Assembly (NCBI RefSeq): GCF_032191835.1
Contig: NC_083234.1
Span: 59,892,001 to 59,956,000 of the forward strand
Length of the DNA: 64,000 nucleotides
Origin: Heteronotia binoei
Lineage: Eukaryota
Reading direction: 5' to 3'
Below, in pieces: positions 25,068 through 63,098 of this stretch. How positions within the stretch are numbered: the stretch's first letter is position 1; each line of letters starts with the position of its first letter. Made by a program: the position numbers and the translations under genes. Under the pieces are notes generated by a model that had not been told where the DNA came from, searched no databases, and saw nothing but the letters and a program-made list of their open reading frames with translations.

Positions 25068-25443
25068 TGTTGTGTCCTAGGTTCAAATGGAGAACTGTTA
25101 CTTTTGGAGGGAACTGTTACTTTTGGAGGGAAGCTGAACAAGCCAAGCTTGTACTCCACACCAGGGTTCCAGAGAAGGCCTAAGCGTGCCCAATCAGGGG
25201 AAGGATTGAAACATAAGTAGCCAATCAACATCTAGGCTCATACTGTACCCTGATAGGCCCTTAGGCCTCTGTAAATAGCCAATCCATGTACATAGTTAAG
25301 GTCCAATCAGAAGGGGGCAAGAATTGTATAAAGGAGCAGGAGGTTTGAATAGAGCTCAGTTTGTGTTGGTGTTCCTGAAGTAAAGCTTGCTGAAATCACT
25401 CTCCGACTCTGGTCTCTTACTGCGCCGACCCCAGTACTTTACA
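25068..25443 (+). repeat. 5' LTR
   Basis: TGTTGTGTCC...CTTTACA; contains two tandem copies of gaactgttacttttggagg, four CCAAT boxes and TATAAA at 25327. Confidence 0.97.
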
Positions 25444-25444
25444 C

Positions 25445-25462
25445 TGGCGACGAGGATGGGAT
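25445..25462 (+). promoter_or_regulatory. Primer-binding site for tRNA-Ser(GCU)
   Basis: TGGCGACGAGGATGGGAT is the complement of the recalled vertebrate tRNA-Ser(GCU) 3' end ATCCCATCCTCGTCGCCA. Confidence 0.85.
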
Positions 25463-25584
25463 ACCAGTAAGAACCAGCAACAGAACCAGGAACACGGAAA
25501 GGTGGCTAAATCCAAGCCATCTGGGTCCCCACCTCCGCTCTGCGCACACCCCATCTCTCAAGCCGCCCAGACACGCTGCCAAGA

Positions 25585-29610: not shown

Positions 29611-29623
29611 TAGCTGGAACTAT

Positions 29624-29634
29624 GGGGGGAGGGG
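29624..29634 (+). promoter_or_regulatory. Polypurine tract
   Basis: GGGGGGAGGGG immediately before the 3' LTR. Confidence 0.9.
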
Positions 29635-30010
29635 TGTTGTGTCCTAGGTTCAAATGGAGAACTGTTACTTTTGGAGGGAACTGTTACTTTTGGAGGGAAG
29701 CTGAACAAGCCAAGCTTGTACTCCACACCAGGGTTCCAGAGAAGGCCTAAGCGTGCCCAATCAGGGGAAGGATTGAAACATAAGTAGCCAATCAACATCT
29801 AGGCTCATACTGTACCCTGATAGGCCCTTAGGCCTCTGTAAATAGCCAATCCATGTACATAGTTAAGGTCCAATCAGAAGGGGGCAAGAATTGTATAAAG
29901 GAGCAGGAGGTTTGAATAGAGCTCAGTTTGTGTTGGTGTTCCTGAAGTAAAGCTTGCTGAAATCACTCTCCGACTCTGGTCTCTTACTGCGCCGACCCCA
30001 GTACTTTACA
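29635..30010 (+). repeat. 3' LTR
   Basis: Same length and sequence as the 5' LTR. Confidence 0.97.
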
Positions 30011-30729
30011 CTCTGGATATCAGAGCTGTCTGCTCCACCTTCCAGAACTTAGCTATATGATAGATATGACATGAGCAAGGTCAGCAGTCTCCTGGCCCAG
30101 CCTTACTGACAGACACATGTACCATTGGGGGACTCACCATACAAACTGTCCTTGCTGAGGCTTGGAGCTCACTGAGGGGAGAGGAGGGGCTTCTGCCTCT
30201 CCTCATATGCTGTTTTCCCTAGCGGAAATGGCCGCAGATGGACCTGTTTGCCCCTTTCTCAGATCCCATGTGTTCTCAGTCACATGATTCCAGGTCACTT
30301 GGGGCCCAAGAAAGGGGCAAATAGAGGAGGGGGGCTCCATGTCCATTTCCTCTTGGGAAAATGGTGCACAAGGGAAGGCAAAAGTCTCTCCTCCTCCCTC
30401 ACAGCATTCTGAACCACACCAAGCAATGGAAAGGTTTGTAAGGTGAGGCTCTCAATGGTACATATGACTGCAAGTCAGGCCAGGGAACCCTCACCCAGCT
30501 TGCGTCACATCTACCCTATAGCTAGGCTACCCAGTTTTTCTCTTTATACTCACACAAAGACAGAGCTCCTCCTTGCCACTGGCCAGCTGGCCAGCAGTGG
30601 AAGCTCTATCCCCAAGCCCTGCCTCCAAGAGTGACCACTGGAGCTCAGGTGTGTGGCCAGTGGCCACCCCTCTCTCTCTCCTGCTGGGAGATTAAAGGGC
30701 CCTCCAGCTGGTTTGGCAGGAGAATACTA

Positions 30730-32600: not shown

Positions 32601-34262
32601 GATCAGGGGAATGCAGGCTGGAATCACCAACTGTGTTGGCCAGTCCACTCCTCTCGACCTCATATACTGCACACAGTAGTTGCTTTGAGGAAAAAAAACT
32701 GAGGAAGGAGAACAATGTTCTTGGGCACTTTTTGTCACCACTGGGAGGGAAAATGGCATAAACATCATGTAGGGTTGCCAGGTCCACCTCAGAAAATATC
32801 TGGGGACTTTGGGGATGGAGTTGCAAGACTTTCCCATTCCCTAAAATAAACAAATAGAAATACAGCAGTTCCCCTGAATATAGTCTTCATTTTTTCAGCC
32901 CCCAGCAGCTGCACTTTCACTAAATGAAAGTAAACACAGAAACACACACACAAAGCAGCCAAAATAAACAGTTTGCAAGCACATGCTTTTGTAATCTTAC
33001 TGGGGCAATTTACTCAAGGGAGTTGCTGAATGTAACCATCTGCTGTATTTCAACCAACTTCTTCAGACTAACAGGAAAATTAAAGGGAGCGGTCTAGGGC
33101 ATGGAGTTTCCCTCCATCCCATAATCAGGTTCTAGTTACCTCCATTTTACTATACAACTTCTGAAACAAATGCAAAACAAACGGAGGGACTGGGCAGCCT
33201 TACATTCTCACAGCATCTCACGCTGGGAAAAGTCACATGTCTTTGCCTGCTCATCCTGCCCATCCAGCTTTCCTCCTACTGAGATTTAAAGACACACATA
33301 CCTTCCAAAACACAGCAATTTCCAAGCTTCTTCTAAGTCTGTCTAGTTTTAAAGACACATGGTGGCTGTTAGGGCAGGGAGGAACCTGCAAAACTGAGGA
33401 AATTCCCCACTGGGATCTTGGGCCTGGCAAGCCTAAGTTTGCTTATTTAACCCTGCCTTTCCTGCTATCCACTGTGGCTCAAGGCAGCATACAAACTGGT
33501 GTTATTATAAAGGTTGCTAAGTAATTTAGGATCGGTTTAAAGACACACTGTGCTGTGTTTACATCATGGATTTTAATATTTTACATTGTCTTTTTTTTTG
33601 CTTGGGATATTCACTTTTTCTATGGTTGTCTGAACATTTATTTAATAAAGATATATTTAAAAAAAAATTAAACTGCACTTTCATATAGATTTATTCATTT
33701 ATTCTTGGTTTGCCTTTTACCATGTTTGCTGGCTGCCAAAAGGTCTGTGCTTCAGACATCCCATAGTCCTCGTTGTCCAAACAGTACCCAATACAAACCT
33801 CTTTGCTATTGTTAGAGATGTTGATTCATTATAGGCACATCCAGACACCTGTTGTACTAAAAGCAGATGTGTTCCATATATCCAACCATCACAAAAGCGC
33901 TTCTGAGAAAGAGGGAAAAGACTGCCCTCTGGCAGTGAATACCCCGTGCCGTCTGATGACAACCACACCCTTTGTTTTTTAATCTTATACATTTAGACCG
34001 TCCCTTTCCTTCCTTCCATTCATTGCTTTTACCAAGATCAGGCAGTGCTACGCCGACTCCTGTTCTTTGTGCTTCATCGTTTGTTTTCTACATTATGTGC
34101 AGCCAGATAAATATCACATAGACATGATCTCCATTGTTTTTCGTCTTTTTAATTTGTTCGTCTTTTTAATTTGTTTGTTTTCTTTCATCATAACGATCCG
34201 GAGATGGGAGCTGTGAGCTCCTGTGGCTGATCTCTCTCCCTTTCTCTCCCTGTCTTTCCCAG

Positions 34263-43345: not shown

Positions 43346-43608
43346 GACCGATTTCGCACTCACCCTATGCTGCTCTGACGTTCCTCTTTTCAGTGCAGCG
43401 TCCTTCCGATTTCCCACTATCTGCCCCGGGGCTTCAGCTTGCATTGGCGTTTTTGCATGGAAAAGCGAAACCACTAAAAACCAGTTTCTCTTTGCCATGA
43501 AAAACGCCGATCTTTGTTGAAGCCCAGGGGCAGATAGTGGGAAATCTGAAAGAAGCCATGTTGAAAAGAGGAATATCAGAGTGGCGTAGGGTGAGTGGAA
43601 AATCGGTC
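43346..43608. mobile_element. Foldback PIF/Harbinger-like MITE
   Basis: GACCGATTTCGCAC...GTGGAAAATCGGTC TIRs, long internal inverted arms, 3-bp TSD CAA/CAA. Confidence 0.8.
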
Positions 43609-44476: not shown

Positions 44477-45868
44477 TCATTTGTTTATAAAGGCCCTACA
44501 AATGCTGGAAATACGCAGACATATGATGATCAGCATTAGTAGAATAAAGAAATAGTTTCCTGCTTGATTTCCTGGGTCCTCTCCCGTGTCCCACGCTATT
44601 TGTTGTAGAACTTTGCTGACATTTCCAATTAATGACATATTGTACCTCCAGAGAGTTGTGTCCTTAATTAGGAGAAGTCGAGAGAGATTTTCTTGAAGGG
44701 GAGCCCGGCAATGATAGACCAAAGCAACATCCATTGGAATCCATTTACTGTCCCCATAGGCCTGGAGAATGGAGTGGACCGATGTCTGAACCACTTTCCT
44801 TGGATCAACAATCATTTTCCGAGGATTAACAATGTGTTTTCGGTCTGGTTCTCGGAGGACATGCTGCAATATGTTCACCCCAGGTATTGTGTTCCAAGAG
44901 GAAGTGTTGAATTTGTAAGTGAGGGTGAACACGGTTTTAGGGAAGACGTGAGTTTCAAAGCGGAAGACACCAGCCATTGGGTTTTGCTCTTGAAGATCCT
45001 GCATCATGGTTTTCCAATCTGGATACTTCCCTGGTAGAATAATTTCATCTACATCGTTGAGGAGCACATATTTGCTCCTGTACATGTTGCGATAAATGCA
45101 GTCATTCAAGGCTGTGATTTGTCCATAGTAGCCAATGTCCTTGGGATCCATTGAGTGATGCCACCGAGATGAAACATTGAGGTGTAAGTCAATGGGCCAG
45201 GGAATTATCTCGACAATCCCTTCTGCAATATAGTAATCCAGCACTTTCTCTATCAGTGGGCTGCAGCTGTTCTTGTAGATCACCACTCGGCCCACCCCAA
45301 GGATTTTATACATCTCCATGCTCTGCAGAAACTGCAGGACGTTGTTGTACTCTCCAAACATGGTGGAGATGCAGACTGTGAATTCCACAAGGGAACCTTC
45401 AGGATCACGGTTTCTTATTTCAAACCGTGGTAGCTGGTCGATATCTCCTGTAGGAGACCAATGTATTGACATGTGACGTGGTTCCCAGTCTTCTGGTTCC
45501 AGACATTTCAAGTCTGTGGCCCCATATGGGAAGTCAAATCTATCGGAATGGACATCTATTTCAGCTTTGGAGATGTATATTCGACCATTAGCTGGGTGAC
45601 AGAACCAGCAGTAAAGTTGCTTGACATCCTTGTGGTGGACTATAGCAATCACTCGTGTCATATTGTTCTTTCTGTTGTCAAAGTATGGAGCAATGATGAA
45701 GGTTCGATTATCTGTTAAGGGTGTGATGGTGTTATTGGCAGGAATCCCTCCACAGAGCTTGATTTCTGGCATGGACAGTTTTGCTCTCTGAAAGTAGGAA
45801 ATAATCACTATTGAAGCGCAGGCAGCAATGCAAACAGGAACCACAAGGTGTGATTTTTTCCTAGACAT
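44477..45868 (-). CDS. Glycosyltransferase family 92 protein (GALT-1-like, DUF23), single coding exon
   Basis: 463-aa intact ORF; N-terminal TM LVVPVCIAACASIVIISYF; FTVCISTMF, VVIYKNSC, EIIPWP, YYGQITALNDCIYRN, LLNDVDEIILP (DxD) and HYC-like LVYHCR motifs; splice acceptor ctttcccatccag before 45919. Confidence 0.88.
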   Translation of the reverse strand: MSRKKSHLVVPVCIAACASIVIISYFQRAKLSMPEIKLCGGIPANNTITPLTDNRTFIIAPYFDNRKNNMTRVIAIVHHKDVKQLYCWFCHPANGRIYISKAEIDVHSDRFDFPYGATDLKCLEPEDWEPRHMSIHWSPTGDIDQLPRFEIRNRDPEGSLVEFTVCISTMFGEYNNVLQFLQSMEMYKILGVGRVVIYKNSCSPLIEKVLDYYIAEGIVEIIPWPIDLHLNVSSRWHHSMDPKDIGYYGQITALNDCIYRNMYRSKYVLLNDVDEIILPGKYPDWKTMMQDLQEQNPMAGVFRFETHVFPKTVFTLTYKFNTSSWNTIPGVNILQHVLREPDRKHIVNPRKMIVDPRKVVQTSVHSILQAYGDSKWIPMDVALVYHCRAPLQENLSRLLLIKDTTLWRYNMSLIGNVSKVLQQIAWDTGEDPGNQAGNYFFILLMLIIICLRISSICRAFINK

Positions 45869-47035: not shown

Positions 47036-50000
47036 AGATGTTTAAGAGCCACAAGACATTATTATCATGAATGTCAGATGTGTGTGAGAGCCACAAGAGA
47101 GGAAGGAAGGAAAGAAGGAAGGAAGTTGGTAGTTGGTGATTCGATCCTTAGGCAAGTAGACAGCTGGGTGGCAAAACCGCATACTGACCATATGGTGACT
47201 TGCCTGCCTGGTGCGAAGGTAGTGGACATTACGCATGTTGTAGATAGGCTGATAGACAGTGCTGGGGAGGAGCCAGTGGTCATGGTGCATGTTGGCACCA
47301 ACGATGTGGAGAAATGCAGTCGTGAGGTCCTGGAGGAAAAATTTCTCCTGCTAGGCAGGAGACTTAAGGCCAGGACCTCCAAGGTAGCCTTCTCAGAAGT
47401 GCTACCTGTTCCACGTGCAGGGCTGGAGAGACATGCACAAATTAGAAGTCTCAATGTGTGGATGAGACGATAGTGTAGGGAGGAAGGGTTTAAGTTTGTT
47501 AGGCACTGGGATGCTTTCTGGAACAAGTGGGAGCTGTACAAAAGAGATGGTCTTCACTTGTCCCCAGATGGAACCAAGCTGCTGGCGCTTAAAATCAAAA
47601 AGGTGGCAGAGCAGTTTTTAAACTAAATCTTGGGGGAAAGCCGACGGAGATGAAATGTCTCTTGTTCGGGAGGACTCATCTCAAAGAGATGAAGGGTTAG
47701 CTGTTACTTTTCGGGTAATGGATCAGAGTTGTCCACTGAGATGGTGACAAACAGTATGGAGTGTCTGCCAAAGTCTCGAGGCAGCAGGAGGAAGGTTGCG
47801 GGCCTAACTTGCCTGGGAAATTATAGATGTTTGTATACAAATGCTAGAAGTGTTCGAAGTAAAATTGGTGAGTTGGAATGTTTAGTGTTGGGGGAAAACA
47901 TAGACACTGTGGGAATTTCAGAAACTTGGTGGAATGAGGAGAATCAGTGGGACGTGGTGATTCCTGGATATAAGTTATATCGGAAGGATAGGGAGGGAAG
48001 GGTTGGAGGTGGGGTGGCTCTGTATGTCAGAGAGGGTATACAGTCCAGTAAGACTGAGGTCAAAGAATTAGATTCCCTTCTAGAAATGCTTTGGGTCGAA
48101 ATAGAGGGTCCAAAAGAAAATTTAACTATGAGAGTTTGTTATCGCCCACCAAATCAAAAGATAGAGGATGATCATAATATGATGGAAGGATTAAAGATAG
48201 CGGCTAAACGTAAAAACTGTGTCGTAATAGGTGATTTTAACTACCCGCAGATTGATGTGTTCAGGTCGAGAGACAGAGATTGAGTTTTTAAATGTTCTCA
48301 ATGACTGTGCTATGGAGCAGATGGTCACATAACCTACCAGGGGTGGGGCAATCCTGGATTTGGTCCTAAATTATGCCCAAGACTTGGTGAGAAATGTAAA
48401 AGTGATTGCACCGCTTGGGAGTGGTGACCATAACATTATTGATTTCACCATTTGTATAAATAGGGAGTTGCCCCAAAAGACCAACACAACCACTTTTAAC
48501 TTTAAAAGAGGTAAATTCTCTGAGATGAGGAGGCATGTGAAGAGGAAACTGAAAGGAAAGATAAATAAAGTCAAAACCCTTGGGGAAGCTTGGAGGCTAT
48601 TTAAAACTACAATCCTAGAAGCTCAGATAAAACATATACCACAAGTTAGGAAAGGCACAAACAGGTATAAGAAAAGGCCTGCATGATTAACTAACAAAGT
48701 AATGGAAGCTGTAAAAGGAAAGAAGGACTCCTTTAAGCGGTGGAAAGCTAGTCCAAGTGAGATTAATGAAAGGGAACACAGGCTGTGGCAAATCAAATGC
48801 AAGACTGTGATCAGGCAGGCAAAAAGGGACTATGAGGAGCATATTGCAAAAAACATAAAGACCAACAATAAAAATTTCTTCAAATATATTAGAAGCAGGA
48901 AACCAGCCAGGGAGGCAGCGGGGCCCTTGGATGACCAAGGGGTAAAAGGATTACTGAAGGAGGATAGGGAAATGGCTGAGAAGCTGAATGCATTTTTTCC
49001 CTCAGTCTTCACTGTGGAAGATGAGAAGTGTTTGCCTGCTCCAGAACCACTAATTTTGGAAGGGGTGTTGAAAGACCTGAGTCAGATTGAGGTGACAAAA
49101 GAGGAGGTCCTACAACTGATTGACGAATTAAAAACTAATAAGTCACCAGGTCCGGATGGCATACATCCAAGAGTTCTGAAAGAACTCAAAGATGAACTTG
49201 TGGATCTCCTGACAAAAATATGTAATCTTTAATTGAAATCTGCCTCCGTTCCTGAGGACTGGAAGGTAGCAAATGTCACCCGCATCTTTAAAAAGGGTTC
49301 CAGAGGAGATCCGGGAAATTACAGGCCAGTCAGTCTGACTTCAATACCAGGAAAGTTGGTAGAAAGCATTATCAAGGACAGAATGAGTAGGCACGTTGAA
49401 GAACACAAGTTATTGAGGAATACTCAGCATGGGTTCTGTAAGGGAAGATCTTGCCTCGCTAACCTGTTACAGTTCTTTGAGGGGGTGAACAGACATGTGG
49501 ACAAAGGGGACCCAATAGATGTTTACCTTGACTTCCAGAAAGCTTTTGATAAAGTTCCTCATCAAAGGCTCCTTAGTAAGCTCGAGAGTCATGGAGTAAA
49601 AGGACAGGTCCTCTTGCTGATCAAAAACTGGCTAATTAATAGGAAGCAGAGAGTGGGTATAAATGGGCAGTCTTCGCAGTGGAGGACAGCAAGCAGTGAG
49701 GTGCCACAGGGCTCAGTACTGGGTCCCATGCTCTTTAACTTGTTCATTAATGATCTGGAGTTGGGAGTAAGCAGTGAAGTGGCCAAGTTTGCAGATGACA
49801 CTCAATTGTTCAGGGTGGTGAGAACCAGAGAGGATTGTGAGGCACTCCAAAGGGATCTGTTGAGAGGCTGGGTGAGTGGGCATCAACGTGGCAGATGAGG
49901 TTCAATGTGGCCAAGTGCAAAGTAATGCGCATTGGGGCCAAGAATACCAGCTACAAATACAAGTTGATGGAGTGTGAACTGGCAGAGACTGACCAAGAGA

Positions 50001-50700
50001 GAGATCTTGGGGTTGTGGTAGATAACTCACTGAAAATGTCAAGACAGTGTGTGATTGCAATAAAGAAGGCCAACGCCATGCTGGGAATTATTAGGAAGGG
50101 AATTGAAAACAAATCAGCCAGTATCATAATGCCCCTGTATAAATCGAAGGTGCGGTCTCATTTGGAATAGTGTGTACAATTCTGGTCACCGCACCTCAAA
50201 AAGGATATTATAGCATTGGAAAAAGTGCAGAAAAGGGCAACTAGAATGATTAGAGGTTTGGAACACTTTCCCTATTAAGAAAGGTTAAAACGCTTGGGGC
50301 TGTTTAGCTTGGAGAAACGTCGACTGCGAAGTGACATGATAGAGGTTTACAAGATTATGCATGGGATGAATCGTGGGCATTCAATTAAATTGCTGAGCAG
50401 TCAGGTTAAAATAGATAAAAGGAAGTACTTCTTCACCCAAAGGGTGATTAACATGTGAAATTCACTGCCACAGGAGATGGTGGAGGCTACAAGCATAGGC
50501 AGCTTTAAGAGGGGATTGGATAAAAATATGGAGCACAGGTCCATCAGTGGCTATTAGCCACAGCATATATATATATATATGTGTGTGTGTGTGTATGTGT
50601 TTGTGTGTATACACACATATATTGGCCACTGCGTGACACAGAGTGTTGGACTGGATGGGCCATTGGCCTGATCCAACATGGCTTCTCTTATGTTCTTATG
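47035..50700 (+). mobile_element. Near full-length, inactivated CR1 LINE (ORF1 SGNH esterase, ORF2 APE-RT)
   Basis: VVGDSIL..HVGTND (ORF1); LYTNARS, GISETWW, GDFNYP, LDFQKAFDKVPH, KFADDT; several stops and frameshifts; ends cttatgttcttatg. Confidence 0.95.
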
Positions 50701-52138: not shown

Positions 52139-52281
52139 CAGGGCTTTTTGGGGTTGAAAAAGTCTAGCATATTAGGCCACACCCCCTGAGGTCACCATTG
52201 TTTTTAGAAAAAGCCCAGCAGGAGCCCAAACCCCTGACACCAAGCTAGCCAGAACTGTGTTCCTGATTTTAAAAAGCCCTG
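52139..52281. mobile_element. hAT-like MITE (CAGGGCTTTTT termini)
   Basis: cagggcttttt...aaaaagccctg; no matching TSD. Confidence 0.65.
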
Positions 52282-52282
52282 G

Positions 52283-53250
52283 GTTTTTAATTTCCCCAGT
52301 AGGTCTAGAACTTCATCTCTGGTCACTTCAATTTGGCCCAGTTCTTCAGGCTCCCTTCCTGAAAAAAGGGGCTGTGGCATGGGTACATGCCTTACACTTT
52401 CCACAGTGAACACAGAAGCAAAAAATGTCATTGAGCTGCTTTGCCATCACCTCAACTTTCTTTAGCAATCCCTTTATTCCTTTGTCATCCAAAGACCCCA
52501 CTGTTTCTCTGGCTGGATTCCTGCTCTCTCTCTCTCTAAATTATTGTTTGTCTTGAGGCCTTTAGCAACCTGCTGCTCAAAACCTGTTTTTGCATGCCTA
52601 ATTATTGACTTCCATTTCTTTGGCCAGGGCCTGTGGTCCCTGCTGTCCAATACATTGGGGCAGACCTTCCAGTTTTTAAAAGAAGCCTCTTTACTTTTTA
52701 AAATTTCCTTTTCTTGCATTGTTAGCCATGCAGGCCTTATTTTTAGACTTGGCAGTGCCGTTCCTAATCTGTGGAGTGCATTCTATTTGGACTTCAGACA
52801 GTGTGGTTTTAAATAGTATCCTCTAGGGATCTCACTCACTTGTGTTTCCCCTTCAGCTTCTTTTTTACTATTCCCTTCTTTTTTTGTAAGGTTCCCTCTT
52901 TTGAAATCAAATTTGACAGTTTTGGACTTTAGGAGTAAGTTTCCATTGACCGGAATGCTGAACTTAATAGCATTATGGTTATTGTTCCTAACTGGTACAA
53001 CAACTTCTGGATTTCTCATGAGGTCTTGAGACCCACTTAGAACCAAGTAGAAGATCACTACCCCTCTGGTTGGCTCTGTGACCAACTGTTCCAGCACACA
53101 GTCATATATGATATCTAGGAATCTCATTTCTACAACATGACTCAAGCACATGTTTACCCAGTCAATGCGGGTGTAGCTGAAATCTCCTAGTTTAACAACA
53201 TTATCTGCTTTAGGCACCTTCCTTATTTCCTTCTCCATCTCAAGATCAGC
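52283..53250 (-). mobile_element. Old CR1 internal fragment (APE end to RT start)
   Basis: LGDFSYTRIDW, LEQLVTEPTRG, AWLTMQ in broken frames. Confidence 0.85.
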
Positions 53251-53625
53251 CACAAGGGTTTGATTAGGTGGTTAATAGTTCACCCACACTTTTAGGTAAT
53301 CTGTAGGGCTCAGTATTTCTAAATGTATCTCTTCCTTCTGGGATTAATTCCCCATAAATTTTCACGAAAAAACATTAATAATTGCTAACAGTATTTGGTC
53401 TGGTTTTTTCTACATCAATATCATATCTTCCTGTGGTGATGTAAATGTTATTCAGGTTATTATGCTTCCTTATCCCCAAGACATTTTCTCTGGGTAAGAA
53501 AACCACCCCAGTGGCAAAATCAGTAGATTACTGGGGTTGGGATGTTGGTTTTTTAACCCTTTTTATTGATAGAAAGGTGGTAACAAGAAAAGTGGCTGTA
53601 CTTTGGGAGTGCATTACTAATGTAG

Positions 53626-54122
53626 TAGGGTTGCCAGGTCTGACTGAAGAAATATGTGGGGCTTTGTGGGGTGGAGACGGGGAGCAAGGGTTTGGCAAGC
53701 ATGACTGAACTCCAAAGGGAGTTCTGGCAATCACATTTAAAGGGGCCCACACACCTTCTAAATGCCTTCCTTCCATTCAGCAATAATGAAGAATAGGGGC
53801 AGCTTCTTTTGGGGCTCATAAATTGGACCCACTGGTCCAATCTTTTTTTAAACTTAGGGGGTGTTTTGGGGAGAGGCACTGGATACTATGCTGAAAATTT
53901 GGTGCCTCTACCTCAAAAAAATAGCACTCCCCCCCCCCTCAAGCCCCAGATACCAACAGATCAATTCTTCATTATACCCTAAGGGAATCAGTCTCCATGA
54001 AGTATAACGGAATGCCCAGCAAACATTTCCCTCCCCACCCCTGCTTTCTGATGACCCAGAAGTGGGGGGAGGGCCTCCAAACTGGGGGATCCCCTGCTAC
54101 CACCTGGGGATTAGCAATCCTA
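53626..54122 (-). mobile_element. hAT MITE family A
   Basis: TAGGGTTGCCA/tagcaatccta ends; perfect 8-bp TSD TAATGTAG. Confidence 0.92.
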
Positions 54123-54972
54123 TAATGTAGTGGTTCATTGTTTACTCACGTTAACATGATCCTGGGCATAGTTAGGCCTACAAGCTTCAGGGAAGCCTGT
54201 AGTAAAGTAGCTGCAGGGCCTACATGTCCCTTCTGTTCCTCTGATTGGATGGGCGGCAGTTTGGAGGGAAAATAGCCTGAAGGTGTGGGACCTGGGAGCA
54301 AAACATTAAAAGGCCAAGCTACAGATGGGGTTGTTCTCTGTAGAAAGGCTGAGCTGGAGGCAGGTTCCAGCCCCAGAGGGATGGAGGTTGAGTTGGTTTG
54401 AAATTAGAAGAAGGAAACATCTAGTTAGTCACATCAGGGCTTCTATTTCTTTGTACCAACCTTTACTGTTTTTTGTATTCACTGCTGCATTTTTACAAAC
54501 CTCTAATTGTTTTTGAGCACTTACAACAAACCTGTTGTTGTTACACAGTTAAAAGGTACTAGCTAATAAGATATAGGGGTCATGTGGGTGCTCTCGGCCC
54601 TCCCAGACAGACACTTACCAGAAAGCAGTGTTGCCAAGTCCCAACAATTTCCTATAGGGGGAATTTGGGGGCGTTCTGAATGGGGTGGGGCTGTCCTCAA
54701 TGCAATGACATCATGTAGAATGATGTCATCACTCTGGGGACACAGTGCCGTGCATGCATGCCCTCCCCAATTTCCAAGAGAGTGAGTGCCAAGCGCTGCT
54801 GTTCTTCCAAGCCCCAACTGATGCTTGGAAAGCGGAAGCAATCGGCTTCCGCTCTCTCTGAGAGAGCAGGCGCTAGGCGCACTTGCTTCACAAGTTGCAA
54901 ATTTGTGGCTGAGGAGGTAGGCGCACCCTGCACCCATGAGGCCACAGAGTACTATTGGAGGGCAAGTCTTTC

Positions 54973-55506
54973 TAGGGTTGCCAATCCCCAGGTGGGGGCA
55001 GGGGATCCCCCGGTTTGAAGGCCCTCCCCCTGCTTCAGGGTCGTCAGAAAGCGGGGGGAGGGGAGGGAAATGTCTGCTGGGAACTCTGTTATTCCCTATG
55101 GAGACTTATTCACATAGGAAATAATGGAGAATTGATCCGCGGGTATCTGGGGCTCTGGGGCGGCTGTTTTTTGAGGTAGAAGCACCAAATTTTCAGTACA
55201 GCATCTAGTGCCTCTCCCCAAAATATTCCCCAAGTTTCAAAACGATTGGACCAGGGGGGGGGGGCAATTCTATGAGCCCCAAAAGAAGGTGTCCCTATCT
55301 TTCATTATTTCCTATGGAAGGAAGGCATTGAAAAGGTGTGCCGCCCCTTTAAGTGTGATGGCCAGAACTCCCTTTGGAGTTCAGTTAGGCTTGTCACACC
55401 CTTGTTCCTGGCTCCGCCCCTAATGTCTCCTGGCTCCACCCCCAAAGTCTCCTGGCTCCACCCCCAAAATCCCCAGATATTTCTTAAATTGGACTTGGCA
55501 ACCCTA
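54973..55506 (+). mobile_element. hAT MITE family A
   Basis: Perfect TIRs TAGGGTTGCCA; perfect 8-bp TSD AGTCTTTC. Appears nested in an older related element (~54628-55597). Confidence 0.94.
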
Positions 55507-56605
55507 AGTCTTTCCCTGCCGGGCAGCTGGCTTAGGATGGGAAGGAGCCCCCCAAATTGGGGGAAAACCCAGCCAGACCTGGAGGCTGGCAGCCCTACCA
55601 GAGAGCTGGCAATCAGTAGAGGCCCTCCCTGGTCCCCTGCTGCGTGACAAATGTAAAGGTGACAGTGTTGCAAGAAGAAAACATCTTAGCACCATTTCTG
55701 TCAAAAATGTGCAACCAGGATTAAAATTCACTCCAGAGCAAGGATATGTTTTAATGCCTATGATTAGTGGGTCAACATGTATTTTGCTGTTACTTTCATT
55801 GTTATTAGTAGCTGAGTTTTGTTATGAACAGTTCATAACCATTTCTGTAGCCTGTATTTGGCATTTCTGTGGCCTGTATTTGGCATCCCACACCGCTAGT
55901 GATGAGTTTTATTTCTGTTTGCATACGTTTAACTTTTTTGTCAATGGTTTCCATTGCTCAACATTCACCATTTTGTGAACACATTTGCATTGTATTTACA
56001 TATTCTGTTCTTAAAATATGCATCTTATATGGTATTTATAAAATGTTGATTGTGCAGATGCACAAGATATACACAACTTGGGTTTATGAATGCACCAAAA
56101 CTGCTTGGCAAATGCATATACATTACAGAAAAGTTCAGAATGAGGAAACAGAAAATGGCACCGCAATAAGAATGACTAGTCACTTTCTTTCATGCCCTGA
56201 TAAATGCTGATTGCCACTTTGGGGTTGGTCATCATTTAAGTTACAGGTAAATGTTTGGCAAGGGATCCTGGAGGTTTTTGCCATCTTCAGGGCATGGAGC
56301 AGGGGATGTGGGGAGGGGGTGGTGGTGGAGGTATTTGAGAAGTTCCTGCACTATGCCAGGGGGTTGGACTAGATGACCCTGGAGGTCCCTTCCAACGTTA
56401 TGATTCTGTGATTCTCAAAACCAAAACAGAGGGTTTTGATTAAAACAGCAGGGATGAGAGTTTTGAAATTATCTCTAAGACAAGCATGCATTCTAAGCAT
56501 GGATTTTTTTCTGGCAAAAGAGGTGTGGGAGCTTTCAAGAGGGAAATGAGGGAGAAACACACAGAATTATTTAAAATGACATTATTTTCATGAACTGCAG
56601 ACTTT

Positions 56606-56888
56606 TATTGTTGTTCAGTTGCACAGTCGAGTCCGACTCTTTGTGACCCCATGGACAAAGTCACCCCAGGCCCTCCTGTCTTCCACAGTCCTCTGAAGTC
56701 TGCTCAAATCCGTGTTAGTTACATCAGTAACACTGTCCAGCCATCTCATCTTTTGCCATCCCCATCTTCTTTTGCCTCTGTCTTTCCCAGCATCAGGGTC
56801 TTCTCCAGTGAGTGCTCCCTTCTCATTTGGTGACCAAAGTATTTGAGCTTCAGCTTCAGCATCTGACCTTCTAGGGAACAGTCAGGGA
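56606..56888 (-). mobile_element. BovB (RTE) LINE 3' fragment
   Basis: SLEGQMLKLKLKYFGHQMRREHSLEKTLMLGK and gagtcggactcgactgtgcaactgaacaacaa tail. Confidence 0.9.
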
Positions 56889-57714
56889 GTTTAAAACAGT
56901 TTCCAAACATCAGACATGTCACTAACTTCCTCTTTTCTTCTTTGGGTCTTGCTTTTGTTTTCTTACACTGAATGATGACTTGGAAGCAACCATGTTTTAA
57001 CATACTTTGTTGAGTCAAAGTTTGTTACAGGACAGGGGCATCCCCTCACTTAAATTTTACTTTCTAATTTTTATTTTAATATTTTATGGTATCACAAATG
57101 ACATCATGCTTCCCCCCCATGCCCCTCATGAACTTTTTATAATAATTTTGTTTCCACAAAGAGGTTCTGGAACTCCATTCTGCCACATTCCACCAGGAAA
57201 AAAAGCCCTGATTCTAAGTATGATGCAAAAGTGGTTTCTTTTCCTTGAAAACAAACACCTTGGAATGCAACTAATATGTGTTCAGATAACTTCTGTTGCA
57301 CTTTAGAACGTCTGTCTTGACCCTTTGGAAAGCAAGTTATAGAGTTCAAGTGCCTGTTTTGCCCTGATATCTAAAAAACTGTAGGTGGGCCATTCTCTCT
57401 GCTCCAGTCATTCATAGAGTGGCTTATGGAAATAAGATAAATGCATAAGCTGGTAGCACAACCGAAAACTTTCTCTACTGCATTGTGACTCAAAAAACAA
57501 AGTGAGTTGCTGCAATATGAAATCTGCCCTTCTCTTTCCGATCTGCCTCCATTCGGGGCCCAGGAGCAAAAAGCTAAAGGTACCTTGATTGCAATGGGGT
57601 GGTACTGGGTGATGTACACTGAAAAGTCTTAATGCAAAGACACCGCTGGGCAGACTATACCTATCTAGTGGCAGTGAGGCAGAGTGAGATATTTTATTTT
57701 GATTTATTTAAAAC

Positions 57715-58161
57715 TAGGGTTGCCAACCCCTGGTTGGGGACAGGGGATCCCCTGGCTTGGAGGCCCTCCCCCCACTTCAGGGTAATGGGGGAGGGAGGGA
57801 AATGTCTGCGGGACATTCCATTATACCCTATGAAGACCGCTTCCCATAGGATATAATGGAGAATTGATCCATGGATATCTGGGGCTCTGGGGGCTGCTTT
57901 TTTTAGGTAGAGGCACCAAATTTGCAGCATAGCATACAGTGCCTCTCCTCAAAACACCCCCCAAGTTTCAAAAATATTGGACCAGGGGGTTCAATTCTGT
58001 GAGCCCCCAAAGAAGGCACCCCTATCCTTCATTATTTCCAAATGGAGGGAAGGCATTTAAAAGGTGTGTGGTCCCTTTAAATGTGATGGCCAGAACTCCC
58101 TTCGGAGTTCAGTCATGCTTGTCAAACCCAGATATTTCTTGAGTCGGACTTGGCATCCCTA
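57715..58161 (+). mobile_element. hAT MITE family A
   Basis: TIRs plus perfect 8-bp TSD TTTAAAAC. Confidence 0.92.
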
Positions 58162-58521: not shown

Positions 58522-58773
58522 GACCGATTTCCCACCAGCCTTACCTCGCTCTCATTCTCCTCAGCGGATTTCACACCATCTGCTCTTCTTCTGTCGGATT
58601 TCACACTCTCTGCTTACTCCACCTATTTCGCGCAGCAAACAAGATCCTCTAAAAACCAGTTTCTGTTTGCCGTGCAAAAAAGGCGAAGCTAGTTGCAGAT
58701 AGTGTGAAATCCAAAGGCAGCCCTGTGGAGAAGAGGAGCATGACATTGGCATAAGGCTAGTGGGAAATCAGTC
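58522..58773. mobile_element. PIF/Harbinger-like MITE
   Basis: GACCGATTTCCCAC...GTGGGAAATCAGTC; 3-bp TSD ACA/ACA; family of 43346-43608. Confidence 0.8.
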
Positions 58774-58801
58774 ACAGTCTCTTGTAGATTTGCTCTTTGA
58801 G

Positions 58802-61458
58802 TAGGCTTCCCGACCCTCCCGCCCTGGCGGGGGACCCCAGGATTTCCACCCTCTTCCCCCGCTCCCCCAAAAAACAGAAGCGGGGGAGGGGGAAACGGTG
58901 CCGGGGAGCATGGCGAGCCGCCCCATCCCGGAGCGGGCGAGGCCGCCGTGCCACCGCCCCCTCCCCGCCCACCGCAGCTGATCCTCCGAGATGGGCCCAG
59001 GCAGAGCCCATCTCGGAGGAGCAGCCAAGAGGCGGCAGCAGCGCAGGCAAAACCAGGGGAGGGCGGAGGCAGGCCAGGAGCATGGCAAGCCGCGAATCCG
59101 GGCCCTTCTAGGACCCGGACTCGCGGCTTGCCACACACCCGGCCCGCCTCCACCCCCCCTCCGATTCCACCCCAGAGGCGGAGCAGGCGAGGCCGCCGCG
59201 CTGCGGCCGCCTCTTCTCCGCTCGCCGTGGCTGCTCCTCCGAGATGGGCTCAGCTTGAGCCCATCTCGGAGGAGCAGCCACGGCGAGCGGAGAAGAGGCG
59301 GCAGCTGCGCAGCGGCGTCACCCGCTCCGAGACAAGGAGGAGCAGCCCCATAGGGAATGATGGGGAATTGATCTGCGGGTATCGGGGGCTCTGGGGAGGC
59401 TGTTTTTTGAGGTAGGGGTGCCAATTTTTCAGTATAGCATCTAGTGCCTCTCCCCAAAATACCCCCAAGTTTCAAAAGGATTGGACCAGGGGGTTCAATT
59501 CTACGAGCCCCAAAAGAAGGTGCCCCTATCTTTCATTATTTTCTATGGAAGGAAGGCATTTTAAAAGGTGTGCTGTCCCTTTAAATGTGATGGCCAGAAC
59601 TCCCTTGGAGTTCAATGATGCTTGTCACACCCTTGCTCCTGGCTCCGCCCTCAATATCTCCTGGCTCCACCCCCAAAGTCTCCAGATATTTCTTGAATTG
59701 GACTTGGCAACCCTATCAGATTCCCTTCCTGAAAAAAGGGTCTGTGGCATGGGTACATGCCTTACACTTTCCACAGTGAACACAGAAGCAAAAAATGTCA
59801 TTGAGCTGCTTTGCCATCACCTCAACTTTCTTTAGCAATCCCTTTATTCCTTTGTCATCCAAAGGCCCCACTGTTTCTCTGGCTGGATTCTTGCTCTGTC
59901 TCTCTCTCTAAATTATTGTTTGTCTTGAGGCCTTTAGCAACCTGATGCTCAAAACCTGTTTTTGCATGCCTAATTATTGACTTCCATTTCTTTGGCCAGG
60001 GCCTGTGGTCCCTGCTGTCCAATACACTGGGGCAGACCTTCCAGTTTTCAAAAGAAGCCTCTTTACTTTTTAAAACTTCCTTTTCTTGCATTGTTAGCCA
60101 TGCAGGCCTTATTTTAGACTTGGCAGTGCCTTTCCTAATCTGAGGAATGCATTCTATTTGGACTTCAGTTAGTGTGGTTTTAAATAGCTTCCAAGTATCC
60201 TCTAGGGATCTCACTCACTTGTGTTTCCCCTTCAGCTTCTTTTTTACTATTCCCTTCTTTTTTTGTAAAGTTCCCTCTTTTGAAATCAAATTTGACAGTT
60301 TTGGACTTTAGGAGTAAGTTTCCATTGACCGGAATGCTGAACTTAATAGGATTATGGTTCTTTTTCCTAACTGGTACAACAACTTCTGGATTTCTCATGA
60401 GGTCTTGAGACCCACTTAGAACCAAGTAGAAGATCACTACCCCTCTGGTTGGCTCTGTGACCAACTGTTCCAGCACACAGTCATATATGATATCTAGGAA
60501 TCTCATTTCTACAACATGACGCAAACACATGTTTACCCACTCAATGTGGGTGTAGCTGAAATCTCCTAGTTTACCAACATTATCTGCTTTAGGCACCTTC
60601 CTTATTTCCTTCTCCATCTCAAGATCAGCCACAAGGGTTTGATTAGGTGGTTAATAGTTCACCCACACTTTTAGGTAATCTGTAGGGCTCAGTATTTCTA
60701 AATGTATCTCTTCCTTCTGGGATTAATTCCCCATAAATTTTCACGAGAAAACATTAATAATTGCTAACGGTATTTGGTCTGTTTTTTCTACATCAATATA
60801 ATATCTTCCTGTGTGATGTAAATGTTATTCAGGTTATTAAGATGGTCTGTATCTCTCCAGAGAACTAAAAATGCTTCCTTATCCCCAAGACATTTTCTCT
60901 GGGTAAGAAAACCACCCCAATGGCAAAATCAGTAGATTACTGGGGTTGGGATGTTGGTTTTTTAACCCTTTTTATTGATAGAAAGGTGGTAAAAAGTGAC
61001 TGTGGATGAGCCCATCTTGGAGGAGCAGCCAAGAGGCGGCAGCAGCGCAGGCAGAACCAGGGGAGGGCGGAGGCAGGCCAGGAGCATGGCAAGCCGCGAA
61101 TCCGGGCCCTTCTAGGACCCGGACTCGCGGCTTGCCACGCCCCCGGCCCGCCTCCACCCCCCCCTTCGATTCCACCCCAGATGCGGAGCGGGCGAGGCTG
61201 CCGCGCTGCTGCCGCCTCTTCTCCGCTCGCCGTGGCTGCTCCTCCGAGATGGGCTCAGCTTGAGCCCATCTCGGAGGAGCAGCCACGGCGAGCAGAGAAG
61301 AGGCGGCAGCTGCGCAGCGGCGTCGCCCACTCCGAGATGGGGCGGCTCGCCATGCTCCCCGGCGCCGTTTCCCCCCTCCCCCTTAGCTCCACCCCAGTGT
61401 CTCCTGGCTCCACCCCCAAAGTCCCCAGATATTTCTGGGGTTGGACTTGGCAACCCTA
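58802..61458 (+). mobile_element. Composite hAT-ended unit carrying a duplicated local genomic segment
   Basis: Left end TAGGCTTCCC, right end TGGCAACCCTA; flanks tctttgag/cctttgag; subterminal inverted repeats; internal MITE-A half and 1.29-kb copy of 52346-53599. Confidence 0.75.
59716..61003 (+). repeat. Direct duplicate of 52346-53599 (CR1 fragment plus flanking sequence)
   Basis: Collinear high identity at offset ~7370, with small indels (for example an extra ~32 bp near 60840). Confidence 0.95.
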
Positions 61459-63098
61459 CCTTTGAGCCAGATTAAAACAAATTTTCTCAGAGTCAAAAGT
61501 AGATAACTTTATGAGTCATGCTCAGAATGAGTACAAGGTTATATGGGCATTTCCCTTTGATCTAGGGACTTCTGCTTTCCTTGCTTTCTGCAAGGCCTTG
61601 ACGGGGTCATCTCTGCTCCCCCATGTTTCCTTTTTTCCTTCCCTGAAAGCCCCCAATAGCCTCTCTCCCTCTCCTGCTTGCTTCTCTCCTTCCCAGCCAC
61701 CAGCTAACCTACCTTTTTTTGCCATCTTTTTCTCTCCTTCCCTCCCCAGGCAACCTCCCCCTGAGAAAACTGGCCCAGTTGCAAAAGTGCCATTTGCTGG
61801 GCTGAACCCAGTCAAATGGTACTGGCTGAGTTGGGCCCAGTTGTGTGGTGCCAGCCACCTAGGCCCAATTGCAAAGTGGAGATCCTGCAAGTACTTGTGG
61901 GGAGCATCTCACTTTCCCATGTATCACCCTCTTCACAATATTTCCTATTTCCTTCCTCCTGGCAGTGCCCATACCCTCAATTTTCTCTGTTTCCTTCTCT
62001 CTTTCCCACTCACTAACCAACCTGCCTTTTACTTGAACCTGGGACTCCCAGATCCTACCATGACAGAATACTGGTTTTTATGAGGTGGCAACAACCGTTG
62101 AACAGTAGCAAGCAGCCAGCCCTGGGTGTGTTGTGCAAGTTGTATGGTATCAGATCACCTACGGTTTCAGGTCTGTAGAAAAGTCTGTCTTATCTGCCCA
62201 TTGCCCCAGTCCACAGCCAGCATTTAAGTGTCCACAGATGGGAACCACTATGAGAGTTAGATATGTTGATGATGGCTGATATACTTAAAGTAATATACAT
62301 ACCAATATCATGATTTAATATGGAACTTAAATAGAAAATCCAGTTTAAAAACTGGAAAACAGAACTAGAGCTACTGTGTTTGAAGATGAAGGCTGAATTT
62401 TCTGAACTTTGCATTATTTTTAGTTTAAGGCTTAATTTCCTTTTGGAGGTATTGTTTTACTGTGGGAAGTTACTTTTATTTGGTTCACTGCCCTTTCAAC
62501 TAGAGCACCTTCGGGCTGTTAATTTGCTGTCTCTTTCTACTCTAGCTACTATTTCTTGGTTTAAAAATTCACTTTTCCACAATGATTATTATAACATTCG
62601 TTTATAACATTAGTAGCATGTATCTGTTCTAAAGCGTTAAGCTTGCTTAAGTCTTCAAAAGAGAGGGTGGAGATGTCTGCTGATTCCTTTCTCCCAGTAC
62701 AGACCCTCATTTTGTTACCAATGATACCCCAGAATCATTGGGGGTGGGGTGGGAGGGCTCAATGGGCTACAGCAGTAGGGAGAAGTAGGAAGATCTCACT
62801 CCACAAGGCCCATGGATCACTGGATACATCCCAACAGTTTGAACATCAAGCACATGGATGCTAGATTTCTGTTCCGAATTTGGTGCATTTGAATGAGAGC
62901 GTTAGCATGACAATGGGGCTGTGGCTCAGCCATAATAAATCACACACTTCCCATGCATAACATCCCAGATTCACTCCCTGTCATGCCCAGTTAAAGTATT
63001 CAGGAAGCAGATGTTGGGGGAGATCTTTCTGCACCTGAGACCCTGGAAATCTACTCCCAATCTGAAAGGACAATAACAACCCAGAAGGACCAATAGTC

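What the first reader, a model, noticed from the sequence alone, without database searches (positions are those of the whole stretch)
58802..61458. Composite hAT unit that captured a 1.29-kb neighbouring segment (alternative-transposition-like structure)
Seen: outer ends resemble hAT TIRs and are flanked by tctttgag/cctttgag (7/8 TSD), and the subterminal sequences are inverted copies of each other. Inside, the GC-rich body breaks at 59332 and switches to the right half of MITE family A (59347-59715). That internal TIR abuts, with no gap, a copy of 52346-53599. A 4-nt filler follows, then the GC-rich body restarts at the 59004-equivalent position (59004-59332 duplicated at 61008-61337). The donor site at 52346 has no MITE-A end next to it. 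Established: maize Ac/Ds alternative transposition and gap repair with template switching produce composite insertions with re-copied local DNA, and Pack-type elements capture host DNA. Inference: a vertebrate hAT system generated a local duplication by such a route, and the unit could move as a cargo carrier.
Basis: partly seen in the sequence, partly recalled or inferred. Interest (0 to 1): 0.8.

Follow-up and report, generated by a model that had tools for sequence, protein, structure and literature searches.

The report
hAT element with copied neighbouring DNA
A small hAT-type DNA transposon whose GC-rich core folds into hairpins was broken and mended by copying 1.3 kb from a site about 5 kb away, a known way for transposons to pick up host DNA, so it is a clear but ordinary example.

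Summary
One hAT-type non-autonomous element ("G", 58802-61458) has an 8-bp target duplication matching at 7 of 8 positions. Inside it are a 14-nt junction patch, the right 369 bp of the very abundant "MITE-A", a 1288-bp copy of 52346-53599, a 4-nt filler, and a 329-bp re-copied stretch of the element's own core.

New here:
- The cargo is a LINE fragment plus 283 bp of low-copy, non-LINE flank. It shares 23 of 25 private substitutions with the neighbour, so it is a DNA-level copy of that locus and not an independent repeat insertion.
- The two duplications are the same age.
- Both core breakpoints sit at hairpin landmarks: one in a loop, one 3 nt past a stem base.
- The left junction carries a 12-nt motif templated from the element itself.

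This fits template-switching repair or replication inside a resident element, the "gap-filling" route to single-copy Pack-TIRs (Tan et al. 2021). Alternative transposition is not supported: the donor site is intact, with no transposon end and no footprint. Read depth gives no sign that the unit has moved or multiplied. The origin of the MITE-A half, joined exactly at its terminus, is unresolved. Other unchecked notes from this scan describe similar elements elsewhere in this genome.

Verdict: new member of a known kind, modest interest.

The parts
58794..58801 (.). Left target-site duplication, TCTTTGAG
   Evidence: It matches 61459-61466 at 7 of 8 positions.
58802..59332 (+). Left part of element G (positions 1-531 of an inferred 652-bp simple form). 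It holds the TAGG... terminus, subterminal arm 58882-58963, and three hairpins at 58977-59025, 59055-59160 and 59179-59329. GC content is 72.5%.
   Evidence: Repeats. Folding as DNA gives -178 kcal/mol, z = -17. Read depth is about 1200x at the left end and 85-400x (about 100-200x over most of it) in the body, so G is a multi-copy family.
59333..59347 (+). Left junction patch: CAA, then the 12-mer GGAGGAGCAGCC (59336-59347). The 12-mer's last two bases (CC) overlap the start of MITE-A homology.
   Evidence: In the 64-kb window the 12-mer occurs only in G hairpin arms (five + strand sites, this patch copy among them, and two - strand sites). About 0.008 occurrences are expected by chance.
59347..59715 (+). 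Right 369 bp of a MITE-A copy, ending at the exact element terminus ...CAACCCTA.
   Evidence: Alignment with three in-window copies. 15,534 reads diverge into unrelated flanks exactly after 59715. The best in-window match is only 85-91% identical, so the source is not in the window.
59716..60720 (-). Cargo part 1: a copy of donor 52346-53341. It is an internal fragment of a LINE (C-terminal half of the endonuclease domain plus the linker before the reverse transcriptase) on the minus strand.
   Evidence: tblastn to the older LINE at 47801-50455, which carries Exo_endo_phos and RVT_1. Identity to the donor is 97.7%. Read depth is 10-35x. 23 of 25 private positions are shared with the donor.
60721..61003 (+). 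Cargo part 2: a copy of donor 53342-53599. This is low-copy DNA with no LINE homology, the donor LINE's 5' flank.
   Evidence: Depth drops to about 0-1x per run in organism C and to 0-4 (word depth) in organism D. No LINE homology was found with relaxed tblastn, and no other copy exists in the window. Identity to the donor is 98.0%.
61004..61007 (+). 4-nt filler, GGAT. Under another equally good alignment it is a 2-nt filler with a GAG microhomology.
61008..61458 (+). Right part of element G (positions 203-652). 61008-61337 repeats 59004-59332. 61386-61458 is a MITE-A-type right end.
61459..61466 (.). Right target-site duplication, CCTTTGAG
52346..53599 (+). Donor segment. It is longer than the copy on both sides: the LINE continues left to about 52279, and unique DNA continues right.
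   Evidence: The LINE frame is continuous across 52346. The donor later lost 8 bp that both the copy and the older LINE retain.
53626..54122 (-). MITE-A copy with a perfect 8-bp target duplication, TAATGTAG. One of three in-window copies that define the family as hAT-like.
54973..55506 (+). MITE-A copy with a perfect 8-bp target duplication, AGTCTTTC.
57715..58161 (+). MITE-A copy with a perfect 8-bp target duplication, TTTAAAAC.

Best explanation
A single non-autonomous hAT-type element (G; simple form about 652 bp) inserted at a CTTTGAG-containing target. Its 72% GC core folds into three long hairpins.

The core then suffered a break or a stalled fork at those hairpins. Repair or replication synthesis left the element, copied ectopic templates, and returned to the element 329 bp upstream of where it had left. 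This is the transposition-independent or excision-induced 'gap-filling' route to single-copy Pack-TIRs.

The result, left to right, is: G 1-531, a short templated patch, a MITE-A right half, 1288 bp copied from a locus 5.2-7.4 kb upstream (about 1 kb of LINE fragment plus 283 bp of unique flank), a GGAT filler, and G 203-652.

Shown:
- The parts and their junctions.
- That the cargo is a DNA copy of the neighbour.
- That the two duplications are equally old.
- That the breakpoints lie at hairpin landmarks.
- That the patch is templated from G.

Inferred: the repair mechanism itself, and that it happened in place.

Unresolved: the MITE-A half. Its junction with the cargo is blunt and lies at the exact transposon terminus, which points to a transposase-made joint. 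I rate two routes about equally likely.
(a) The template was a donor allele carrying a MITE-A insertion at 52346 that the reference haplotype lacks.
(b) A MITE-A inserted into the cargo after capture, and a later deletion with the templated patch removed its left half and the cargo to its left.
For: - One element: a 7/8 target duplication at TAGG...CCTA ends. MITE-A, which shares G's right end, has three perfect 8-bp duplications in the window.
- Copy of the neighbour: the LINE part and the non-LINE part are equally diverged, 97.7% and 98.0%. The non-LINE part is low copy and has no LINE homology. 23 of 25 private substitutions are shared with the donor. The donor extends beyond the copy on both sides.
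- Same age: non-CpG divergence is 1.5% for the core duplication and 2.1% for the cargo, Fisher p = 0.66.
- Hairpin breakpoints: 59332 is 3 nt past the base of the 59179-59329 hairpin. 59004 lies in the 58997-59005 loop.
- Templated junction: the 12-mer at 59336 occurs elsewhere only in G hairpin arms. There is a 4-nt filler at the other junction.
- Literature match: 370 Pack-TIRs in 100 animal genomes, 208 of them hAT. 57% lie within 15 kb of the parental copy. Fillers and microhomology are common, most are single copy, and they are attributed to gap filling with template switching (PMC8277862).
Against: - Two nascent strands overlapping by 329 nt should normally anneal rather than both be kept. 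I can only suggest that self-folding of the hairpins blocked annealing.
- Template switching alone does not explain the blunt joint at the exact MITE-A terminus, so a second (transposase) event has to be added.
- Microhomology is weak: 2 nt at the left junction and 0-3 nt at the right.
- No pre-capture state (a simple G at this site) and no junction-spanning long reads could be examined.
- The short reads come from 'organism C', whose identity with the window's species is not established. At about 1x per run, their copy-number estimates are rough.
Confidence: 0.65

Rival explanations
1. Alternative (reversed-ends or sister-chromatid) hAT transposition with re-replication made an Ac/Ds-style composite insertion. 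Two transposon ends from separate elements inserted together and carried their flanking DNA with them.
For: An 8-bp target duplication flanks the whole unit. An internal transposon terminus (59715) abuts non-transposon DNA with no gap, as in 'element plus its flank'. The internal joint has a 4-nt filler, as in end-joined composite insertions (model in PMC4270019).
Against: - The model needs a progenitor element sitting at 52346. The donor has none, and the LINE reading frame is unbroken there, so there is no excision footprint.
- There is no reciprocal duplication or deletion at the donor.
- Both outer ends run into one element's own interior, with a 329-bp overlap, and not into progenitor flanks.
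- The only MITE-A near the donor (53626) is 77% identical to the internal half, whereas the cargo is 97.8% identical to the donor.
Confidence: 0.08
2. The composite formed at another nearby G copy by fork stalling and template switching, and then transposed into this site as a unit (the FoSTeST model). It would be a genuine mobile cargo carrier.
For: The target duplication flanks the complete unit and the ends are nearly intact. G shows few private substitutions at family-invariant sites (3 in the 202-bp unduplicated left part), so insertion and rearrangement may be close in time. hAT elements tend to reinsert locally (own knowledge). The model is described in PMC8277862.
Against: The low-copy cargo part has a depth of about 0-1x per run, no more than expected for the donor plus this copy, so there is no sign of other copies. 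Formation in place needs one step fewer.
Confidence: 0.12
3. The structure is a pile-up of independent insertions: a LINE of the same family inserted into G, followed by a MITE-A and then deletions. No copying from the neighbour was involved.
For: The LINE family is multi-copy (10-35x depth) and MITE-A is extremely abundant (14,000-25,000x depth), with four copies within 8 kb here. A third, 67%-identical LINE copy lies at 48301-49135.
Against: The copy includes 283 bp of non-LINE, low-copy donor flank and ends short of the LINE's 3' end. It shares 23 of 25 private substitutions with the donor.
Confidence: 0.03
4. Assembly artefact: a false join or a collapsed or expanded repeat at the high-copy MITE-A or the palindromic core.
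For: Palindromic GC-rich DNA and a repeat with more than 10,000 copies are both error-prone for assemblers. No long reads were available, and no indexed run holds the unique flank.
Against: The duplicated parts differ by 2-4% and by indels, and are not identical. The outer target duplication matches across the whole unit, which a chimeric join would not give. The divergence of the two duplications agrees.
Confidence: 0.04

Closest known systems
Single-copy Pack-TIR / Pack-hAT elements of animals formed by gap filling with template switching (Tan et al. 2021, PMC8277862)
   Same: A TIR transposon with a target duplication holds an internal copy of DNA from a parental locus on the same chromosome less than 15 kb away. 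There are filler or short microhomology at the breakpoints, internal rather than terminal breakpoints, and a single copy.
   Different: - The element is not shortened. Instead, 329 bp of it is duplicated on both sides of the insert (a 'negative gap').
- The filler is compound: a templated 12-mer, half of another transposon joined at its exact terminus, and the neighbour's DNA.
- The cargo is a LINE fragment plus intergenic DNA, with no gene piece.
- Both breakpoints map to hairpin landmarks of a palindromic core.
Abortive gap repair after Ac or P-element excision, which gives Ds-type derivatives with filler DNA and copies sequence from ectopic sites (own knowledge: Rubin and Levy 1997; Yan et al. 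1999; Nassif et al. 1994. The P-element case is cited as proven in PMC8277862.)
   Same: Synthesis proceeds from both ends of the element, synthesis is interrupted, the template is switched, and there is filler at the joint.
   Different: Those events usually delete the interior, with breakpoints near the ends. Here the interior is kept and partly doubled. Whether excision started the process cannot be told.
Maize Ac/fAc composite insertions from reversed-ends transposition with re-replication (Zhang et al. 2014, PMC4270019)
   Same: Transposon termini with an 8-bp target duplication enclose a segmental duplication joined by end joining.
   Different: The progenitor geometry is not seen: no pair of elements at the donor, and no re-replicated flanks attached to each end. 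The donor is intact. The size is 2.7 kb, against the kilobases to tens of kilobases described for maize composite insertions (5 to 19 kb among those read).
FoSTeS/MMBIR complex rearrangements and palindrome-centred breakage (own knowledge: Lee et al. 2007; Hastings et al. 2009)
   Same: Serial template switches to nearby sequence, a duplication created by re-entry upstream, templated insertions, and breakpoints at secondary-structure-forming DNA.
   Different: It is confined to the interior of a 652-bp transposon. One joint is at a transposon terminus.

Membership tests
hAT-superfamily non-autonomous element (G and MITE-A) | 8-bp target-site duplication | tested here: met
   MITE-A shows three perfect 8-bp duplications: TAATGTAG, AGTCTTTC and TTTAAAAC. 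G matches at 7 of 8 positions.
hAT-superfamily non-autonomous element (G and MITE-A) | Short terminal inverted repeats | tested here: met
   MITE-A has the perfect 12-bp repeat TAGGGTTGCCAA. In G, 9 of 12 positions match in this copy, and 10 of 12 once the family base at 58812 is used.
hAT-superfamily non-autonomous element (G and MITE-A) | Mobilised by a hAT transposase (an autonomous partner with matching ends) | not tested
   The ORF list for the window was not searched for a hAT transposase. The rest of the genome was not available.
hAT-superfamily non-autonomous element (G and MITE-A) | Target preference nTnnnnAn | tested here: inconclusive
   Of four target duplications, one fits fully (TTTAAAAC) and two fit in part (TCTTTGAG; CTACATTA on the reverse strand). 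Four sites are too few.
Pack-TIR (transposon-captured duplicate; Tan et al. 2021) | A TIR element with a target duplication enclosing non-transposon DNA that has a separate parental copy | tested here: met
   60721-61003 is low-copy, non-LINE DNA copied from 53342-53599 along with the adjoining LINE fragment.
Pack-TIR (transposon-captured duplicate; Tan et al. 2021) | Gap-filling signature: parental copy nearby on the same chromosome | tested here: met
   The donor ends 5.2 kb upstream of the element. The paper reports 57% within 15 kb.
Pack-TIR (transposon-captured duplicate; Tan et al. 2021) | Gap-filling signature: microhomology or filler at breakpoints | tested here: inconclusive
   The left junction has a templated 12-mer plus a 2-nt overlap. 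The right junction has a 4-nt filler or a 3-nt microhomology, depending on the alignment. The MITE-A/cargo joint is blunt.
Pack-TIR (transposon-captured duplicate; Tan et al. 2021) | The same transposon without cargo at the orthologous site of an outgroup (capture after insertion) | not testable with these tools
   No related assembly was reachable. The only locus fetched is the window's own genome. No indexed run holds the flank.
Ac/Ds-type composite insertion by alternative transposition (Zhang et al. 2014) | Termini from two separate neighbouring elements, each carrying its own progenitor flank into the insertion | tested here: not met
   Both outer ends continue into one element's interior, with a 329-bp overlap. 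The flank attached to the internal MITE-A end has no element at its origin.
Ac/Ds-type composite insertion by alternative transposition (Zhang et al. 2014) | Reciprocal rearrangement or footprint at the progenitor locus | tested here: not met
   The donor is collinear with the copy and with the older LINE, and its reading frame is continuous across 52346.
Ac/Ds-type composite insertion by alternative transposition (Zhang et al. 2014) | 8-bp target duplication around the whole insertion | tested here: met
   7 of 8 positions match. An ordinary insertion shows this too, so it does not discriminate.
LINE (endonuclease plus reverse-transcriptase retrotransposon), for the cargo | Homology to the endonuclease/reverse-transcriptase ORF2 of a LINE | tested here: met
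   tblastn of the older in-window LINE (Pfam Exo_endo_phos 3e-10, RVT_1 1e-29) hits 59708-60713 and 52279-53334 on the minus strand. The fragments alone did not reach Pfam thresholds.

The most novel reading that the evidence does not exclude
The three-hairpin GC-rich core of the G family acts as a built-in fragile site. It repeatedly stalls forks or breaks, and re-entry upstream leaves cargo flanked by duplicated hairpin units. This gecko-type genome would then hold a recurrent hairpin-driven Pack-hAT 'capture engine', some products of which are still mobile. Unchecked notes from this scan describe, on other pieces of the same genome, hAT MITEs with three hairpins and one 'carrying 1.7 kb of cargo between duplicated GC-rich units'. 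If those prove to be the same family with the same breakpoint logic, the unsettled origin of Pack-type elements could be tested on many natural replicates.
Probability: 0.15. Interest if true: 0.6.

Novelty: new member of a known kind. Interest (0 to 1): 0.3.

Why it matters
How DNA transposons pick up host DNA is still debated. This locus is an unusually readable example. The donor, the copy, three junctions, a templated patch and an overlap duplication are all preserved at about 2% divergence, and both breakpoints fall on hairpin landmarks. That points to secondary structure inside the transposon as the trigger.

On its own it adds one more vertebrate Pack-hAT-type case, with cargo that contains no gene piece. 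It would matter more if the same family shows the same pattern repeatedly across the genome.

Tried and rejected
- Independent LINE insertion: rejected, because the copy shares non-LINE flank and private substitutions with the donor.
- The MITE-A half copied from a MITE-A in the window: rejected. The best identity is 85-91%, and 77% for the copy beside the donor, against 97.8% for the cargo.
- Excision footprint at donor 52346: none. The LINE frame is continuous.
- RNA-mediated capture of a LINE transcript: unlikely. The copy includes DNA upstream of the LINE's truncated 5' end and lacks the LINE's 3' end.
- Mirrored (compensatory) changes between the two copies of the hairpins: none among 12 substitutions.
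- Public runs: no indexed run holds the unique flank, and only small shares of the repeat part are held. Short reads of 'organism C' gave depth and termini, but the output did not list reads across the three junctions.
- Orthologous or allelic locus through neighbouring ORFs: the 190-aa ORF at 61511 is not on record. The glycosyltransferase ORF returned only the window's own assembly, GCA_032191835.1 CM063336.1, at 100% identity, and it ends short of the element.
- Earlier scan notes by place near the finding and by sequence: blank.
- One literature search was swamped by 'hatchling' matches and gave nothing.
- Pfam on the LINE pieces of the cargo alone: no hit.
Full report

Yes. Self-comparison of 51-63 kb and of the whole window reproduces every element of the description.

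- The unit runs from 58802 (TAGGCTTCCC...) to 61458 (...GGCAACCCTA). It is flanked by TCTTTGAG and CCTTTGAG. The chance of 7 or more matches out of 8 at fixed positions is about 4e-4.
- The subterminal stretches 58882-58963 and 61300-61381 are 85% complementary.
- 59004-59332 recurs at 61008-61337 with 96.4% identity.
- 59347-59715 is the right part of a repeat ("MITE-A") present three more times in the window.
- 59716-61003 is a copy of 52346-53599: 97.75% identity over 1246 aligned bases, with seven indels including ones of 8 and 32 bp.
- GGAT fills 61004-61007.

**2. What the two transposon families are**

The three complete MITE-A copies are 53626-54122 (minus), 54973-55506 and 57715-58161. 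Each has a perfect 8-bp target duplication and a 12-bp terminal inverted repeat, TAGGGTTGCCAA. That is the hAT pattern.

The outer element ("G") carries a MITE-A-type right end (61386-61458, 89% identity) and a diverged version of the left end.

Short reads of a same or closely related species ("organism C") were laid at 90% identity or more, at about 1x per run on the unique flanks. Depths were as follows:

| Region | Depth |
|---|---|
| MITE-A part | 14,000-25,000x |
| G left end | about 1200x |
| G body | 85-400x, about 100-200x over most of it |

Both are therefore real multi-copy families. In addition, 15,534 reads run off into unrelated sequence exactly after 59715, so the internal MITE-A piece stops at the true element terminus.

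Joining 58802-59332 to 61338-61458 gives an inferred simple G of about 652 bp. Its 72.5% GC core folds as single-stranded DNA into three long hairpins (58977-59025, 59055-59160 and 59179-59329). The energy is -178 kcal/mol, z = -17 against shuffles.

**3. What the cargo is**

On the minus strand, 59716-60720 encodes the C-terminal half of an endonuclease domain and the linker that precedes the reverse transcriptase of a LINE. It aligns by tblastn to an older, nearly full-length LINE at 47801-50455, which has Pfam Exo_endo_phos and RVT_1. A 67%-identical DNA match lies at 48301-49135.

Three results nevertheless show that the copy was made from the neighbouring locus at the DNA level.

- Depth falls abruptly to about 0-1x at 60720 in organism C, and to 0-4 in organism D. 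This is exactly where protein homology to the LINE stops. So 60721-61003, which equals donor 53342-53599, is low-copy non-LINE DNA: the flank of the donor's 5'-truncated LINE.
- The LINE part and the flank part are equally diverged, at 97.7% and 98.0%.
- At 25 positions nearly all family reads differ from the composite's copy. The donor shares the composite's base at 23 of them.

The donor is the longer version on both sides. Its LINE continues left to about 52279, and unique DNA continues right. The direction of copying was therefore donor to composite. The donor later lost 8 bp that the copy and the older LINE still have.

**4. The junctions**

- J1: G ...CCGAGA (59332), then CAA, then GGAGGAGCAGCC, then MITE-A from about 59347. 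In 64 kb, that 12-mer occurs only in G hairpin arms, with about 0.008 occurrences expected by chance. The nearest copy is 68 nt upstream. It is a templated insertion.
- J2: the MITE-A terminus ...CCCTA (59715), then TCAG... (equal to 52346). The joint is blunt, with no microhomology.
- J3: cargo ...CTGT (61003), then GGAT, then GAGCCC... (equal to 59004). An equally good alignment gives a 2-nt filler with a GAG microhomology.

The two breakpoints in G are not arbitrary. 59332 lies 3 nt beyond the base of the largest hairpin, and 59004 lies in the 9-nt loop of the first hairpin.

**5. Timing**

Non-CpG divergence is 1.5% (5 of 329) for the G duplication and 2.1% (26 of 1246) for the cargo, Fisher p = 0.66. 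The two duplications are the same age, as expected if one process made both.

**6. Mechanism**

The best fit is template-switching synthesis inside a resident element. A break or a stalled fork arose at the hairpins. Synthesis left G at the base of hairpin 3 and picked up a short G-templated patch. It then copied ectopic DNA and re-entered G at the loop of hairpin 1, that is 329 bp upstream of the exit. This doubled the stretch between those two points.

This is the gap-filling route proposed for animal Pack-TIRs. Tan et al. (PMC8277862) report:
- 370 cases in 100 genomes, 208 of them hAT;
- mostly single copy;
- 57% within 15 kb of the parental copy;
- filler or microhomology at breakpoints;
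- breakpoints biased to the interior of the element.

Whether transposase excision or the palindromes themselves started the event cannot be told. The hairpin positions favour the latter.

One step is not explained by template switching. J2 sits on the exact last base of MITE-A, a chance of roughly 1 in 370, so it was most likely made by a normal MITE-A integration. There are two candidate routes.

- (a) The template was a donor allele with a MITE-A inserted at 52346. The reference donor shows no insertion and no footprint, because its LINE frame is continuous.
- (b) A MITE-A inserted into the cargo after capture, and a later deletion created J1.

The MITE-A half differs from near-invariant family positions at only 5 listed sites out of 369. 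It is therefore not an old copy, but this fits both routes.

**7. Rivals**

- *Alternative transposition with re-replication* (PMC4270019). This predicts that each terminus carries its own progenitor flank, and that the progenitor locus has the paired elements and a reciprocal rearrangement. The donor is intact, and both outer ends lead into one element's interior. The only MITE-A near the donor is 77% identical to the internal half. I give this 0.08.
- *Arrival of a ready-made composite.* This cannot be excluded (0.12), but read depth of the low-copy cargo gives no sign of further copies.
- *Independent nested insertions.* These are refuted by the shared flank (0.03).
- *Misassembly.* This is unlikely, given the 2-4% divergence between duplicated parts and the matching outer target duplication. 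It is unverified for want of long reads (0.04).

**8. Novelty and score**

This is a new member of a known kind. Three features are less usual: the overlap duplication in place of a deletion, the compound filler, and the coincidence of both breakpoints with hairpin landmarks. The cargo contains no gene piece.

First-stage notes from this scan on other pieces of the same genome (unchecked) describe three-hairpin hAT MITEs, and one with 1.7 kb of cargo between duplicated GC-rich units. So the scan has seen similar things before on other DNA. If these prove to be the same family with the same logic, interest would rise.

The window matches assembly GCA_032191835.1, record CM063336.1, at 100% identity over the 21.4-kb locus fetched.

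Noticed in passing
window 25067-30012: Two 379-bp direct repeats (25067-25445 and 29634-30012) are 100% identical. They flank an uninterrupted 1341-aa ORF (25585-29610, +) with reverse transcriptase, RNase H, integrase zinc-finger and integrase core domains. This looks like a very young, apparently intact Ty3/Gypsy-type LTR retrotransposon. Described only.
   Followed up: partly
window 44477-45868 (-): A 463-aa uninterrupted ORF with a Glyco_transf_92 domain (1.5e-39). It is called as a gene in the public assembly and looks like an intronless host gene among the repeats.
   Followed up: partly
window 47201-50700 (+): An older, nearly full-length LINE with endonuclease and reverse-transcriptase domains. 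An upstream ORF1-like stretch carries GTNDV and DGLHLS motifs, which look esterase-like from my own knowledge. It is 67% identical at the DNA level to the cargo's LINE family.
   Followed up: partly
window 52139-52293: A small MITE of about 155 bp with CAGGGCTTTTT...AAAAAGCCCTG ends lies inside the donor LINE, 52 bp left of the point where the copied segment starts.
   Followed up: no
window 53626-58161: Three MITE-A copies lie within 4.5 kb, two direct and one inverted. The inverted pair 53626-54122 and 54973-55506 could form a large stem with an 850-nt loop, starting 26 bp beyond the donor's right edge. It may be relevant to where copying stopped.
   Followed up: no
window 32769-32820: A solitary 52-bp MITE-A-type right end (minus orientation) with no element body attached.
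   Followed up: no
window 58542-58783: The 240 bp just left of the element have a read depth of about 110-260x and a 72% match to 43471-43608. The element therefore sits in or beside another, unnamed repeat.
   Followed up: no
window 59004-59332 vs 61008-61337: Seven of the 12 substitutions between the two core copies are CpG transitions. This is consistent with the GC-rich core having been methylated in the germ line.
   Followed up: partly
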